From Guillardia theta CCMP2712 (lineage: Eukaryota > Protista > Cryptophyta): a DNA stretch of 37,780 nucleotides. Numbering within the stretch: the stretch's first letter is position 1; the number at the start of each line of letters is the position of its first letter. A program made the position numbers and the translations under genes. Under the pieces are notes generated by a model that was not told where the DNA came from, did no database searches, and saw nothing but the letters and a program-made list of their open reading frames with translations. Below are positions 1-5,500 of this stretch, piece after piece. The stretch is from the NCBI RefSeq assembly GCF_000315625.1, contig NW_005434501.1:64313-102092 (forward strand), written 5' to 3'.

Positions 1-160
1 TCCATCAGCACCTCCCCTCCTCCACCTCTCCCTTCAGCACACTCGTCAGCTTTGTCCTCCTCTACTTCCACGTTCAACACCATGACAACGAGGCAGAGCA
101 AGGGAGGAGGAGGAGGAGGAGGGAAGGGAGGAGCTGGGGGGCGGGGGGGGGAGGTCACAC

Positions 161-744
161 CGTGCAGCTAGCAGGTAGCTGACCCCTTGCTCAGCCGCCA
201 GCGGAGTGAGCAGGGTGAAGAGCGACCAGCTGGCAACGCCGGAGGCGAGGAGGAGGCGAGGCGAGGAGAGCTGCTGAGCGAGGCCGAGGGGAGGGAGGGC
301 AAGGGTGTACCCCAAGGAAAAGATAGAACTGATGGAGCCCTTGACTGTCTCTGTGTACCCGAAGTCGCCGCTCATCGGTACAATGGCGATGCTCATGGCC
401 TGGCGATCGAGGGAGGAGACGGCTCCCACGAGACAGCAGAGGAAGACTATCCTCCTTCCCTCGTCGACAATCGTCGATCCCCGCTCCTCCTTCCCCTCCT
501 CCTTCGCTCTCAGTCGTTTCATGTTGGAAGCCCTGTCAATGAGCACGCGCTCTCTCTCTGCCTGCGCCTTCTGGCAAGACACACGAGGCAGCGAATGTCT
601 GCCTGCCATGCTCCTCCTCCCGTACATGAGCTGGCGCTGGCGAGGAGCTGGGAAGTAGTTGCATGGATGGAGGAACGCGTTGGTGAAGGTGGGGAGAGAG
701 AGGGAGCTGAGGGAGAGCACGAGGAGGGAGCGTATTGCTCTCAT
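161..744 (-). CDS. First exon of an MFS anion/phosphate transporter (SLC17/PHT4-like), probably plastid-targeted; gene continues beyond window start
   Basis: ATG at 744 gives MRAIRSLLVLSLSSLSLPTFTNA|FLHP (signal peptide then Phe) and an Arg-rich transit-like stretch. MFS TM1-4 motifs follow: SSLDRQAMSIAIVPM, KGSISSIFSLGY, WSLFTLLTPLAA, YLLAAR. Probable GT donor at 160, followed by a low-complexity intron. Confidence 0.8.
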
Positions 745-879
745 CCTCGAAGAGATGGAGATGTTCACGAGGACGCGTAGGATGCTGAGATAGCAGAAGC
801 AGGGAGGAGAGCAAGTTGAAGTGTAGAGGAAGGATGGAGACTGAGAGGTTCAGGTGAGGGGATGCGGACGAGGGGATCA

Positions 880-907
880 GAAGCAGGGAGCAGGGAGCAG
901 GGCGCAG

Positions 908-942
<35 letters not shown>

Positions 943-966
943 AGCAGGAGGAGCAGGAGGAGCAGG

Positions 967-1005
<39 letters not shown>

Positions 1006-1018
1006 GAGCAGGTGTAGA

Positions 1019-1070
<52 letters not shown>
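880..1070. repeat. (GGAGCA)n-type hexanucleotide microsatellite
   Basis: Tandem GGAGCA/GGAGGAGCA units upstream of the MFS start; source of the poly-L/PA/EQ spurious ORFs. Confidence 0.95.
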
Positions 1071-1460: not shown

Positions 1461-2567
1461 TCAGAAAATCTTGTTCACGCTTGTGGGATTGGAGCGACAA
1501 AGTGGACATGGCCTGTCAGTCGCTCCATCCTTGCACTGTTCACAGAGACACAGGTGTCCGCAGGGTATCAGCGCCCAGTCAGCTTTCCGCTCCATGCAGA
1601 GGACGCAGACGCACTGCTGGTTATCTCCTGCCACTCCCCGAACTCTCGCTCTTGCCTTGGCTTCATATTCTTTCTGGAGCCTTTTACATAAATCGCCGAA
1701 ACTTGGCCGTTGAAATGATTTTTCCCTCCAGCATTCCTGCATGATGCCGTACACTGTTGCCGGGCATGACGGGGGCCTCGGGAGTCGGTCCCCATCAAGT
1801 ACCTTGGATCCCACCAGCCCATCATCTTCAATGGTGCAGAAGGGTACTTCCGCGTACGTCCAGACCTCCCACATGGTCACCCCGAACGCCCACACGTCGC
1901 TCTTCTCCGAGAACCGCCTTCTCCTGATGCTCTCCGGCGCCATCCACCGCATCGGCCGAGCCGTCAACCCTGCCGTGCTCACGCTTACAGCTCGACCCTC
2001 CCCATACGCGCGGTTAGCCATGATCGAAAGCCCATAGTCAGCAATCTTGACACTTACATCCATGTGATTCTGCGCATCTAGACGGAACACAAGCACGTTC
2101 CTCGCCGCCAGGTCTCCATGCACGACCTTACGCAGCGACAGCCGTAACATCCCTTCACAGATCTGCCTGGCCACCTGCAGCTGCGCCAGCAGGTCAATTG
2201 TCTCCCCGTCCTCAGCAAGGTTCGCCAAGATGACATCCAAGGACCCCAAGGGCGCAAACTCTGTCACCATGCAGTAGTCACCAGACATTGGCTCTATGCT
2301 GATAGCAAGATAGCGGACAAGATTCGGGTGTTCGCCCAGCTGCTTGAACCCTTTCACCTCCTTCGCCAACTCCTCCCTCCTCCCAGTTTCCCCGCTGCCT
2401 CGGATGCGCTGGATGGCGACTGGAGTGCTCAGCCATCGAGCCTTGTAGACGAGCTTGAAGGGGCCGGAGCCGATCTGTTGCGTGTCGGTGATCAACGCAA
2501 AGTGCACCCATGGAATGTCTTGCGCTCGGACTCCTCGTCCCCGCCCTAGAGGCCTCCTTGTACCCAG
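1461..2567 (-). CDS. Terminal exon: tyrosine-kinase-type catalytic domain plus RING-HC finger
   Basis: IGSGPFKLVY, HPNLVRY, HGDLAARNVL, KIADYGLS, RPMRWMAPES, SDVWAFGVTMWE, CW...RPSF; then CVLC..PCGHLCLC..C..CPLCR...KIF* at the extreme C-terminus. Confidence 0.93.
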   Translation of the reverse strand: MGTRRPLGRGRGVRAQDIPWVHFALITDTQQIGSGPFKLVYKARWLSTPVAIQRIRGSGETGRREELAKEVKGFKQLGEHPNLVRYLAISIEPMSGDYCMVTEFAPLGSLDVILANLAEDGETIDLLAQLQVARQICEGMLRLSLRKVVHGDLAARNVLVFRLDAQNHMDVSVKIADYGLSIMANRAYGEGRAVSVSTAGLTARPMRWMAPESIRRRRFSEKSDVWAFGVTMWEVWTYAEVPFCTIEDDGLVGSKVLDGDRLPRPPSCPATVYGIMQECWREKSFQRPSFGDLCKRLQKEYEAKARARVRGVAGDNQQCVCVLCMERKADWALIPCGHLCLCEQCKDGATDRPCPLCRSNPTSVNKIF

Positions 2568-5500
2568 CTGAGGGCAGAGTACGTCAAAAAACAAACTTGT
2601 ACATGACGTCAACAACCTGCGAAGCAAACTCACGCTGCTCCGACCGGCCTCGGCCGCAAGAAATAAATCTTTGCCTCCGCTCCGTCCCGCCTGTCTGCTT
2701 CTTCTTCTTCTCCTGACCTGCAGCGCTCAGGAACAAGAAAGTCGAAGCCGGAGTTGCTGCGGACCCTTGAAACGAAAGATTGCTTCCAAAGGAGAAGGCT
2801 GACGAGCTTGGATGTGCAGCAGCAGCAGCACCGAACACAAAGGCAGGTGGAGGCTGCGGCTCTAAAGAGTTGGAAGAGGATGGAGCAGCGGTTGAAGCAG
2901 TGGAAGAAAATGGAGCAGCGGTTGAAGCAGTGGAAGAGGACGGAGCAGCGGTTGCAGTCGAGCATTCGAAAGCCCACGTACTGCTAGAGCCTGCTTCAGA
3001 CTTGCGTGTTTCTAAGCTCGCTGCGTTGGGCGGTGTAAAGGAAAACACGCCGTCACTATTTGTTGAAACATTGGGTTTAGCTGCTATGTGGTCTGAAAGA
3101 GATTGTTGTCACATTCAGGAAGAAATTTGAAAAATCGACCTACTTGCAGTTTCGTTGCAAGATGATTTTGCACCACTGGTCGCAGCAACGGCATCAAGAT
3201 GGGAAAGAGTTGATGAATACGTTGGTTGGGATTCCGAGTGATTGTCTTCATCATTCTCTCTATCATCTTCAACCCGTCCACCTTACTCAACTTAGTTGCA
3301 CAGCAGCTTGCTCAGGTAGAAACTGCATACCTTTCAAAAGGTCCACGTTTGAATTTGAAATCTTGTCAAGAATTACACTCGCTGTCTGAAATGAAATTCT
3401 CCAACTTTCTCCATCCTTCAAGTCTGATTCCGATACAGTATGACCAATCAGCAACGGCTTTCCCATATGTTTCCCTACACAGTGTAGACCATGCTTCTGC
3501 ATCTCACGAAAAGCAGAAATGCTTTCAGTATTATCTGTTGTTTCCAAGAGTTTGACTTTCTCAATAACATCTGAAGCGTTGCCTGAGGTAACGATGGTGA
3601 ACTCCCTTTCGGCATGCTTGTTCAAACAAGCAATAATTTTGAAATCCTTAGTCTGATTGAGCTCTGCAGCTTTGGAATCGTTTGCGCCTGAGGCCTGTTG
3701 ATTACCAGTTGGTCCAAAGATCTTGATGAGATTGCATGTTTTTAACATGACGGTTTGTCCTTCGAGAAGTTTCACTTTGAACATCTCCTCGTGCACATTC
3801 CATAACAGCACAATCCCAATGCTATTGCACATGTCAAGAGCTGATATGACAATGGTATAGCAAAACCACCTTGAGTTGTAGTCTGTACTGTTCCTCAACG
3901 AATGCAGCATGACCCAGTCTCCAGCACGAATTGGCGCATCAGAAGTTGGCGGTTTCCCATCATCCGCTTCTGCCTGTGTTTGAGATGGATCTGGGAAGAT
4001 TTTCAGTCACTCCATTCACAGGCAGAATCGCGTACCATTTGAAGTCGAAGCGGCCGCAGAGAGCTCAGATTCAACAACTGTTTCCTTCACAGCAAAGATT
4101 TCATCTAGGGATTTGTTGGGTTGCGTGTTACACTGGTCTGCCTTCGCTAATTTTCTAGAGTTGTTCAATGAAAGAAAATCCAGATGAGCAGGCAATTTCT
4201 GCAACAACTCATCCAGACGGCTTTCCCAAGCCTCTTTATATTGAAGTATGATATCTTGGATTTCCTCGACTCGTTTTTCGTTGACACCGAGACATTGCAC
4301 AAAAGTTCTCCAGAACTTGCTCCCTTCGCCATCTGCCTTCACGTCTCGCAAGCTAGCACCAAGAAAGATCTTCTTAATCCCTTTCAAAGTCATCAGATAA
4401 AGGATAGGCTCAAACCTTATGGTACCTGGAAACACGTTCTCTCGAACAGGAAAAAGCTCCTTGGCAAGAGCATTAAACTGTTCAATCTTCAGACCATGAA
4501 TCGGATGAGCGCAACTAGGAAAAACTGTCTGAAAAACGTGGAACAGGGTAAATTCTCCTTCTTCAACCTGTTTCAAGTCATCCATGAAGAGCCAGACCAC
4601 TACAGTTTACCTCTGCTGGCAGAAAGGTTCTCCAGGTGAGATCTTCATCTACTGCAGCCTCAAGAAATGCCCTAGCAGTGTCTTCCATCTTTTCAAGTGC
4701 TTCCTTATCTCCACAAGGCGATGCATTCGCAAACCCAATATCTGGCTTCCCCTTCAACCTACGATTTTGAAATTCTTGTGCATCGGCTTGAGAGCATGTT
4801 TCTTCATGTTCAGTCATTTCTGCCAGCGACTGAAAACACGATGCGTTGCAGAATTCACATCTCCACCAACCCGAGAAGAAGTGCTTTCAAAAGCACAAAT
4901 CAAAGCAGAATCAATGAAAAGTGAAGCACTTACATGCATTCTGTCACGGGCAAACTTGAGGTCAGCTTGAATCAATTTCCTTTCGCTCTCGCCCAACGAT
5001 TGGATGGCCACCATGTTGAGTGATTCTAAGTAATTCTCTCTCTGCAAGTTCAAACTCTGAAATTCCTTCATGTCAGACAGATGAAGTCGATTCAGAAACA
5101 CTCACCGAGTAAGTCTGGTTGTCAGCATCAGCTAGATAGAAATCCATGTTTCCAGCTTTGAACGCTTCTTTGGTGGTAGTTAACCACGCGAGCCATCCCT
5201 CCACAGACTTCGGACAAACTAAATACCTGAACAGGTGAGTGCATAGTGAGTGACTCATTACATATGCATGCAACAATCACCTAGCAGTTGTTGATACTGG
5301 AAGATCTACTATGATATTCTTCTTGAGAAAAGAGTCCACGAAGCATCTTGTCTGTAATATATTCAGTCGATGACCGTCATGTGATTAGGCAATGCCTCAG
5401 TTGTTCTGTAGAATTCTTCCTTTTTTTGCTGCATCGAAGATAGCAGGTGCATTGGGTTCACATTGAATCGAGCCTTGGGATAACAAAAGTGAGACACACA

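What the first reader, a model, noticed from the sequence alone, without database searches (positions are those of the whole stretch)
1461..2567. Tyrosine-kinase-type domain with a WNK-style relocated catalytic lysine, fused to a RING E3 finger
Seen: the beta3 VAIK lysine is Gln (TPVAIQ, CAG at 2409-2411). The third Gly of the glycine loop is Lys (IGSGPFKLVYK, AAG at 2454-2456). The alphaC Glu (EELAKEV), catalytic Asp/Asn and DYG are retained. Established: WNK kinases use exactly GxGxFKxVY to replace the missing beta3 Lys, but they are Ser/Thr kinases with HRDLKxxN. Here the catalytic loop (HGDLAARN) and P+1 loop (PMRWMAPE) are tyrosine-kinase signatures. Inference: an independently evolved 'with-no-lysine' active site on a Tyr-kinase scaffold in an alga, probably active although a motif scan would call it a pseudokinase. 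It is coupled in one polypeptide to a C-terminal RING-HC ubiquitin ligase.
Basis: partly seen in the sequence, partly recalled or inferred. Interest (0 to 1): 0.85.

Follow-up and report, generated by a model that had tools for sequence, protein, structure and literature searches.

The report
Algal tyrosine-type kinase–RING with moved lysine
A cryptophyte-alga gene joins a tyrosine-kinase-like domain, whose ATP-anchoring lysine sits in the glycine loop as in WNK kinases, to an IAP-type RING ubiquitin ligase; the same arrangement marks a large protist family that I could not find described.

Summary
On the minus strand, one open frame (1461-2633) encodes a kinase domain plus a C-terminal RING. 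Aligned to EGFR, the third glycine of the glycine loop is Lys (AAG 2454-2456) and the beta3 lysine is Gln (CAG 2409-2411). The alphaC Glu, catalytic Asp and Asn, and the DYG Asp are all kept.

The domain is tyrosine-kinase-like by Pfam score, by PDB sequence hits and by AlphaFold/Foldseek matches. No WNK appears among the best hits, even with the N-lobe alone.

The swap is not private to this gene. Among 419 related kinase domains, 107 have the loop Lys without the beta3 Lys, 191 have the beta3 Lys without the loop Lys (146 with loop Gly), and only 2 have both. Trees and an AU test favour one old origin, followed by long retention in cryptophytes, a haptophyte, an alveolate and many environmental sequences. 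Catalytic residues are conserved, and most members carry a RING, a U-box or ubiquitin.

The best reading is an active, WNK-style but independently evolved kinase fused to a dimeric IAP-type E3. Activity is inferred, not shown. The 5' end of the gene is unresolved. The scan flagged two paralogues in this genome in the same way. I found no published description of the family.

The parts
1461..2633 (-). Open reading frame holding the kinase domain, a linker helix, the RING and the stop codon (1461-1463). The frame stays open up to 2726 and has no in-frame ATG before the kinase.
2568..2633 (-). Intron-like stretch (GTGAGT...CAG) just upstream of the exon start at 2567. It is out of phase with the upstream Ser/Ala/FG-rich ORF, so the 5' gene model is unresolved.
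   Evidence: the same cag|CTG acceptor-like context occurs in relative L001
1677..2483 (-). Protein kinase domain, tyrosine-kinase-like (Pfam PK_Tyr_Ser-Thr, ORF residues 51-319).
   Evidence: E 1e-61, 209 bits; (pLDDT 90.8; best folds are all tyrosine kinases)
2442..2474 (-). Glycine loop IGSGPFKLVYK. The Lys codon AAG at 2454-2456 replaces the third glycine (P0001 K18, first residue of strand beta2 in the model).
   Evidence: Lys at this column in 103 of 103 loop-Lys-class domains and in 100 of 106 alignable domains of the FastTree clade
2409..2420 (-). Beta3 strand VAIQ. The Gln codon CAG at 2409-2411 stands where the VAIK lysine should be (P0001 Q33).
   Evidence: in the clade this position is Leu 74, Gln 8, Met 8
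2358..2360 (-). AlphaC glutamate (P0001 E50), retained.
   Evidence: Glu in 106 of 120 clade domains
2097..2120 (-). Catalytic loop HGDLAARN of tyrosine-kinase type. Asp132 and Asn137 are kept; the HRD Arg is Gly.
2031..2039 (-). DYG, a variant of DFG, with the Mg-binding Asp157 kept.
   Evidence: DYG in 68 and DFG in 38 of 120 clade domains
1932..1955 (-). P+1 loop and APE motif PMRWMAPE (tyrosine-kinase signature).
1464..1616 (-). C-terminal RING-HC (C3HC4_3, eight zinc ligands) with an 11-residue tail ending in KIF.
   Evidence: best solved relatives are XIAP and cIAP1/2, and the tail KIF aligns with XIAP's KIF; a tail of 11-13 residues ending in R/K-I-F/Y is conserved

Best explanation
This is one member of a multi-copy family of cryptophyte nuclear genes encoding a tyrosine-kinase-like kinase joined to an IAP-type RING E3 ligase.

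The kinase most likely still works. The lysine that holds the ATP phosphates and pairs with the alphaC glutamate is supplied from the start of strand beta2, at the third position of GxGxFG, which here reads GxGxFK. It does not come from beta3, which here carries Gln and in most relatives Leu. This is the WNK solution, reached independently on a different kinase scaffold.

The RING, by its sequence and its conserved aromatic C-terminal tail, probably acts as a dimer that activates an E2~ubiquitin, as XIAP and cIAP do. One polypeptide could therefore phosphorylate a partner, or itself across the dimer, and ubiquitinate it.

Shown here: the sequence features, the fold class, family-wide conservation and the domain fusion. 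Inferred: ATP binding through the loop Lys, catalytic activity, Tyr or dual specificity, RING dimerisation, and any functional coupling of the two activities.
For: The positions are exact. The alignment to EGFR puts K18 opposite the third loop glycine and Q33 opposite the VAIK lysine. In the AF2 model, K18 opens strand beta2 and Q33 lies in beta3 (pLDDT 90.8, pTM 0.86).

The two positions are coupled across 419 related domains: 107 have loop-K without beta3-K, 146 have loop-G with beta3-K, 45 have another loop residue with beta3-K, 2 have both, and 25 have neither. Most of those 25 are degenerate domains of multi-kinase proteins.

In the loop-Lys clade (120 domains from 50%-identity clusters) the rest of the catalytic machinery is kept. 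AlphaC Glu is present in 106 of 120. The HxD...N catalytic loop is kept nearly throughout, with HRDLAARN itself in 60. DYG or DFG is present in 106 of 120. The loop Lys is present in 100 of 106 alignable domains. Decaying pseudokinases would not be expected to show this pattern.

Other ATP-site positions changed with the swap and then stayed fixed. The hinge Met became Ala85 (100 of 103). The spine Met after the alphaC Glu became Phe or Leu at position 54. Phe141 is present in 96 of 103.

A single origin is the best tree found (constrained tree 33.7 log-likelihood units better, p-AU 0.94; canonical domains form one side of a branch with SH-aLRT 89). A nested pair, P0253 and P0257, has flipped both sites back together.

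The E3 link is persistent. Of 49 clade representatives, 23 carry a RING, 12 a U-box and 5 ubiquitin.

The RING is closest to XIAP and cIAP, with its tail KIF aligned to XIAP's KIF. The tail length and the aromatic residue are conserved.

The exact DNA is present in contigs of three separate studies.
Against: There is no biochemical evidence for any member of the family.

The coupling rests on about one gain and one reversal. The independent-pairs test therefore has no power.

This gene has HGD instead of HRD and Gln rather than the family's usual Leu at beta3.

Conservation of catalytic residues also occurs in some nucleotide-binding pseudokinases.

Expression is only suggested. The runs that hold the exon are guessed, not recorded, to be RNA. 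The start codon and 5' exons are unknown.
Confidence: 0.65

Rival explanations
1. The domain is a true pseudokinase. It no longer transfers phosphate and serves the RING as a substrate-binding or regulatory module, perhaps still binding nucleotide. On this view the loop Lys has another role.
For: The beta3 Lys is missing, which is the usual definition of a pseudokinase. This gene also has HGD rather than HRD. A sub-clade (P0057, P0090, P0258) has lost the loop Lys as well. No activity data exist. Reviews stress that many pseudokinases keep some motifs (PMC13519141).
Against: The loop Lys, alphaC Glu, catalytic Asp and Asn and the DFG Asp are kept together across a clade diverged to about 30-40% identity. 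The loop-Lys and beta3-Lys states are almost mutually exclusive. WNK shows that this exact arrangement is catalytic (PMC13686953).
Confidence: 0.2
2. The kinase is active, but the loop Lys is not the functional stand-in for the beta3 Lys. On this view it serves another purpose, such as substrate or anion binding, and ATP is positioned by other residues.
For: The geometry was not measured. POMK shows that a beta2 Lys can pair with partners other than the alphaC Glu (PMC13519141).
Against: The Lys sits at the same loop position as in WNK. The alphaC Glu, its expected partner, is retained in 106 of 120 domains. No other conserved basic residue specific to the clade turned up near the ATP site in the contrast analysis.
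Confidence: 0.08
3. The feature is an artefact: a sequencing or assembly error at the beta3 codon, or a decaying pseudogene copy.
For: No start codon was found in frame.
Against: The frame is intact for 390 codons and aligns end to end with relatives at 61-69% identity. All sampled words of 2380-2560 occur in contigs of three studies. The nearest relatives also have Gln at this codon.
Confidence: 0.02
4. It is a divergent member of the WNK family itself.
For: The GxGxFKxVY loop and the missing beta3 Lys match the WNK hallmark (established knowledge; PMC13686953).
Against: The catalytic loop is HxDLAARN, not HRDLKxxN (my own knowledge of the WNK consensus). The P+1 loop is PxRWMAPE. The motif after beta8 is DYG, where WNK has DLG (my own knowledge). 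The best 60 sequence hits and the best 50 fold hits in PDB are tyrosine kinases, with no WNK, even for the N-lobe alone. No WNK accessory domain was found.
Confidence: 0.01

Closest known systems
WNK (with-no-lysine) kinases
   Same: The ATP-anchoring Lys sits at the third position of the glycine loop, at the start of beta2 (GxGxFKxVY). The beta3 position holds a non-basic residue. The alphaC Glu and the catalytic Asp and Asn are kept.
   Different: WNKs are Ser/Thr kinases on their own kinome branch. From my own knowledge they have an HRDLKxxN catalytic loop, a DLG motif, Cys at beta3, chloride regulation and CCT-like or autoinhibitory domains. Here the scaffold is tyrosine-kinase-like (HxDLAARN, PxRWMAPE, DYG), beta3 is Gln or Leu, and the partner domain is a RING or U-box. 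No sequence or fold affinity to WNK was seen.
POMK (protein O-mannose kinase)
   Same: It is another case where the VAIK Lys is lost and an ATP-positioning Lys has moved to beta2 (PMC13519141).
   Different: POMK is a secretory-pathway sugar kinase with strongly divergent motifs. Its Lys pairs with an Asp of a DLD motif, not with the alphaC Glu. The family here keeps an otherwise canonical protein-kinase active site.
Holozoan tyrosine kinases (EGFR, FAK, Abl, Eph, Tec family)
   Same: They are the best sequence matches (E 1e-42 to 1e-35, about 30-34% identity) and the best fold matches (TM by target 0.75-0.90). They share the catalytic-loop and P+1-loop signatures.
   Different: They use the canonical GxGxFG with VAIK. 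They have no C-terminal RING or U-box. The hinge Met and spine Met are replaced here by Ala85 and Phe54. Tyrosine specificity of the algal family is untested.
IAP-type C-terminal RINGs (XIAP, cIAP1/2, ML-IAP, MUL1, MYLIP)
   Same: The subtype is C3HC4_3, placed at the extreme C terminus, with a short tail ending in an aromatic residue. The tail KIF aligns with XIAP's KIF.
   Different: The RING is attached to a kinase domain instead of BIR, CARD, transmembrane or FERM modules. Dimerisation and E2 choice are not tested.
Plant kinase-E3 fusions (KEG, and U-box PUB proteins with a kinase domain). This comparison rests on my own knowledge and was not tested here.
   Same: One polypeptide holds both a protein kinase domain and a RING or U-box.
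   Different: The plant proteins have canonical beta3 Lys kinases of other lineages and a different domain order or other extra domains. They are not evidently related to this clade.

Membership tests
WNK kinases | Catalytic Lys in the glycine loop/beta2 and no Lys in beta3 | tested here: met
   K18 stands opposite the third loop Gly and Q33 opposite the VAIK Lys in the EGFR alignment.
WNK kinases | Sequence and fold affinity to the WNK/NRBP branch | tested here: not met
   No WNK appears among the best 60 PDB sequence hits for the whole domain or the N-lobe, nor among the best 50 Foldseek hits. A curated reference phylogeny was not run.
WNK kinases | Ser/Thr-type catalytic loop (HRDLKxxN) and a DLG motif (consensus recalled from my own knowledge) | tested here: not met
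   The gene has HGDLAARN and DYG. The clade has HRDLAARN, or variants keeping the AxRN ending, and DYG or DFG.
WNK kinases | Chloride or osmotic regulation through the pocket freed by the moved Lys | not testable with these tools
   This needs biochemistry or a structure.
Tyrosine kinase group (TK-like) | Catalytic loop HRDLAARN/HRDLRAAN and P+1 loop PxxWxAPE | tested here: met
   The gene has HGDLAARN and PMRWMAPE.
Tyrosine kinase group (TK-like) | Best profile, sequence and fold similarity to tyrosine kinases | tested here: met
   PK_Tyr_Ser-Thr scores 209 bits against 103 for Pkinase. The PDB sequence and Foldseek hits are all tyrosine kinases.
Tyrosine kinase group (TK-like) | Phosphorylates tyrosine; monophyly with holozoan tyrosine kinases | not tested
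   There is no assay. No TKL or other outgroup set was available for a group-level tree.
Pseudokinase (motif definition) | Lacks at least one of the beta3 Lys, the HRD Asp or the DFG Asp | tested here: met
   The beta3 Lys is absent. However, a compensating Lys is present and conserved, so the motif definition is probably misleading here.
RING-HC, C3HC4_3 (IAP-type) | Eight zinc ligands in C3HC4 order and a Pfam score above the cut-off | tested here: met
   The score is 44.5 bits against a cut-off of 27. The ligand pattern is listed.
RING-HC, C3HC4_3 (IAP-type) | Short C-terminal tail with a conserved aromatic residue, used in dimeric E2~Ub activation | tested here: inconclusive
   The tail is present, is conserved (R/K-I-F/Y) and aligns with XIAP's KIF. 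Its function and dimerisation were not tested.

The most novel reading that the evidence does not exclude
Moving the lysine may have done for this family what it does for WNKs. It may have freed the beta3/DFG region to hold a small regulatory ligand such as an anion or water network. If so, these kinase-E3 proteins would be ion or osmotic sensors in cryptophytes and haptophytes that turn ionic state directly into (tyrosine) phosphorylation and ubiquitination. That would be a convergent WNK-like sensing system on a tyrosine-kinase scaffold.
Probability: 0.1. Interest if true: 0.85.

Novelty: new variant of a known kind. Interest (0 to 1): 0.62.

Why it matters
Recent reviews still present the lysine placement of WNKs as unique, with POMK as the only other noted case of a Lys moved to beta2 (PMC13686953, PMC13519141).

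A large, old and well-conserved protist clade has reached the same arrangement on a tyrosine-kinase-like scaffold. That would show the solution is accessible more than once. It would warn that motif scans miscount these proteins as dead kinases in algal kinomes. It would also provide a natural comparison set for asking what the relocation buys.

The near-constant fusion to a RING, a U-box or ubiquitin also points to an unstudied one-protein link between phosphorylation and ubiquitination in ecologically important algae. It bears, too, on the debated presence of tyrosine-kinase-type enzymes outside Holozoa.

Tried and rejected
WNK membership was rejected.

Assembly error or pseudogene was rejected as unlikely.

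The top PDB hits for the N-lobe fragment were designer PPR proteins. These are repeat-driven chance matches with no single stretch passing on its own, and I ignored them.

The independent-pairs test for co-evolution of the two sites was uninformative, because the trait changes too few times on the tree. I therefore argue from retention and mutual exclusivity, not from repeated co-variation.

Laying RNA and DNA reads failed. Later look-ups used other parts of the window, other proteins or a stored model. I do not take the contig for human.

Enumerating GT-AG joins to find an upstream exon with an ATG gave many weak candidates and no convincing model. One candidate is a 43-nt intron from an ATG at 2604.

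Nine literature searches and several papers were read for any description of this family or of a loop-Lys tyrosine-type kinase, and none was found. The Kwon et al. pseudokinase survey was not held.

Full report
**What is in the sequence**

On the minus strand an open frame runs from 2633 to the stop at 1461-1463. It encodes, without interruption, a protein kinase domain, a long linker helix and a C-terminal RING.

Pfam gives PK_Tyr_Ser-Thr at 209 bits, Pkinase at 103 bits and zf-C3HC4_3 at 44.5 bits.

- the glycine loop IGSGPFKLVYK, with AAG at 2454-2456
- VAIQ, with CAG at 2409-2411
- the alphaC Glu at 2358-2360
- HGDLAARN at 2097-2120
- DYG at 2031-2039
- PMRWMAPE at 1932-1955

The HMMER alignment to EGFR sets the loop Lys opposite the third glycine of GSGAFG. 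It sets the Gln opposite the Lys of VAIK, and the Glu opposite the alphaC Glu. The reading of the motifs is therefore backed by an alignment and does not rest on inspection alone.

**What kind of kinase**

The best 60 solved-structure sequences are all tyrosine kinases: EGFR, a reconstructed Src-Abl ancestor, JAK/TYK2, EphA2, Abl and FAK, with E-values of 1e-42 to 1e-35.

An AlphaFold2 model built on 120 homologues is confident (mean pLDDT 90.8, pTM 0.86). Only the activation loop is poorly predicted. K18 (numbering of P0001, the window's own protein) is the first residue of strand beta2, and Q33 lies in beta3.

Foldseek against the PDB returns only tyrosine kinases in the best 50. The N-lobe alone finds B-Raf, ITK, TAO2 and Nek7 as its first real kinase hits, and no WNK.

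The domain is therefore tyrosine-kinase-like and not a WNK. I could not run a tree with curated TK, TKL and WNK references, because no tool supplied those sequences. Group-level placement rests on these similarity rankings.

**The organism and the family**

The nearest named relatives are hypothetical proteins of the cryptophytes Guillardia theta (at least eleven paralogues) and Hanusia phi, at 61-64% identity. A 66-69% identical protein comes from an environmental contig.

The runs that hold the DNA include cultures of two coded organisms and freshwater or lake samples. The window is thus from a cryptophyte other than those two genera.

Further relatives come from the haptophyte Chrysochromulina, the alveolate Alphamonas edax and many metagenome or metatranscriptome contigs. 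Atlas clusters with the same architectures are labelled mostly Haptophyta and, for a U-box form, Rotifera (a lead only).

The scan's own notes list two more genes in this genome flagged in the same way.

**Coupling of the two substitutions**

In the first 120 homologues, every protein with FK in the loop lacks the beta3 Lys, and every protein with FG has it.

I then cut out all kinase domains from 259 proteins (the and one search hits) with an HMM and aligned them. That gave 419 domains:

| Loop position | Beta3 position | Domains |
|---|---|---|
| Lys | not Lys | 107 |
| Gly | Lys | 146 |
| other | Lys | 45 |
| Lys | Lys | 2 |
| not Lys | not Lys | 25 |
| either column gapped | | 94 |

Most of the 25 'neither' domains are visibly degenerate domains of multi-kinase proteins.

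On a FastTree of 349 domains, built without the trait columns, the loop state changes only 7 times. One bipartition of 120 domains holds 100 of the loop-Lys domains.

A more careful IQ-TREE run on 90 thinned domains puts the canonical domains on one side of a branch (SH-aLRT 89) and all loop-Lys domains on the other. When all loop-Lys rows and their nested derivatives are forced into one clade, the tree is 33.7 log-likelihood units better than the free search (p-AU 0.94).

The best reading is one ancient change followed by retention. There was one nested loss of the loop Lys (P0057, P0090, P0258). There was also one nested pair that has both sites back in the canonical state (P0253, P0257).

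Because the events are so few, the independent-pairs test has no power. The argument for function is therefore mutual exclusivity and long retention, not repeated co-variation.

**Why I think it is active**

Within the loop-Lys clade, whose members are down to about 30-40% identical, the residues that matter only for catalysis are kept:
- alphaC Glu in 106 of 120
- the HxD...N catalytic loop kept nearly throughout, with HRDLAARN itself in 60
- DYG or DFG in 106 of 120
- the loop Lys in 100 of 106 domains where both columns can be read

The beta3 position is filled by Leu (74), Gln (8, this gene's subgroup) or Met (8).

A contrast of the 103 loop-Lys domains with the 180 canonical domains finds other ATP-site positions that changed and then froze. 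The hinge Met became Ala85 (100 of 103). The spine Met four residues after the alphaC Glu became Phe or Leu at position 54. Phe141 follows the catalytic loop in 96 of 103.

This looks like a remodelled but constrained active site. WNK kinases show that a Lys at exactly this loop position supports catalysis (PMC13686953, PMC13519141).

None of this is an assay. I put the active, loop-Lys-dependent reading at about 0.65 and a true pseudokinase at about 0.2.

**The E3 part**

The RING has all eight ligands. Its closest solved relatives are XIAP, cIAP1/2, CGRRF1, MEX3C, ML-IAP, MUL1 and MYLIP. The last three residues, KIF, align with XIAP's KIF.

Across the family the RING is followed by a tail of 11-13 residues ending in R/K-I-F/Y, with at most one or two further residues.

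From my own knowledge of IAP and MDM2-type RINGs, such a tail aromatic residue of one protomer contacts the ubiquitin on the other protomer's E2. I therefore infer a dimeric ligase.

Of 49 clade representatives scanned, 23 carry this RING, 12 a U-box and 5 a ubiquitin domain. The link between this kinase type and the ubiquitin system is thus a property of the clade.

**What remains open**

- The gene's 5' end is unresolved. The kinase frame has no ATG and is open up to 2726. The same cag|CTG context precedes the homologous codons in the environmental relative L001, where the called ATG may lie inside the intron end. The donor at 2634 is out of phase with the upstream Ser/Ala/FG-rich ORF, and no convincing first exon was found.
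- Expression is not shown. The exon's words are complete in two runs that are only guessed to be RNA, and partial in one lake RNA-Seq library.

**Comparison and novelty**

The active-site arrangement works like WNK, but the gene fails the WNK membership tests for lineage, catalytic loop and accessory domains. It is closest in scaffold to holozoan tyrosine kinases and in its ligase to IAP-type RINGs.

In nine full-text searches and the reviews read, I found no description of this family or of a tyrosine-kinase-type domain with a glycine-loop lysine. Reviews from 2026 still call the WNK placement unique.

I class it as a new variant of a known kind. It is of real interest to kinase specialists but rests on sequence evidence alone.

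Noticed in passing
window 874-1070: A hexanucleotide microsatellite (GGAGCA, about 32 copies, 88% matches) lies between the kinase-RING gene and the next gene. It reads as long poly-Leu or Gly/Ala runs in the mechanical ORFs.
   Followed up: partly
window 46-768 (-): This ORF has a Major Facilitator Superfamily match (MFS_1, E 1.3e-09). It is probably an exon of a transporter gene downstream of the kinase-RING gene on the same strand.
   Followed up: partly
window 2584-3048 (-), repeat at 2871-2954: A Ser/Ala-rich ORF with FG-like motifs and a 30-nt tandem repeat (2.8 copies) lies directly upstream of the kinase exon. It has no Pfam match. Whether it belongs to the same gene is unknown.
   Followed up: partly
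window about 3100-5100: This stretch has lower G+C (about 43% against 50-59% around it). It holds two minus-strand ORFs of 207 and 194 aa that have no Pfam match.
   Followed up: partly
P0121 (2911 aa) and other hits: Some proteins carry up to ten tyrosine-kinase-like domains in a row, several of them with degenerate catalytic motifs (tandem kinase/pseudokinase arrays). Their source organisms are unknown.
   Followed up: no
L001 500-600: Upstream of the related environmental gene, GTGAG donor-like sites recur every 15-25 bases (for example cag|gtgagatgcaaa repeated). This recalls the scan note on micro-exon arrays feeding a kinase-RING gene in this genome (s1-431588).
   Followed up: no
P0253, P0257: Two proteins nested in the U-box part of the loop-Lys clade have FG in the loop and VAxK in beta3. 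This is an apparent concerted reversal of both sites.
   Followed up: partly
(Atlas clusters): Kinase plus U-box and kinase plus ZZ clusters are labelled mostly Rotifera, and a bare kinase cluster is labelled Nucleocytoviricota. These are possible transfers or contaminants that merit a closer look.
   Followed up: no
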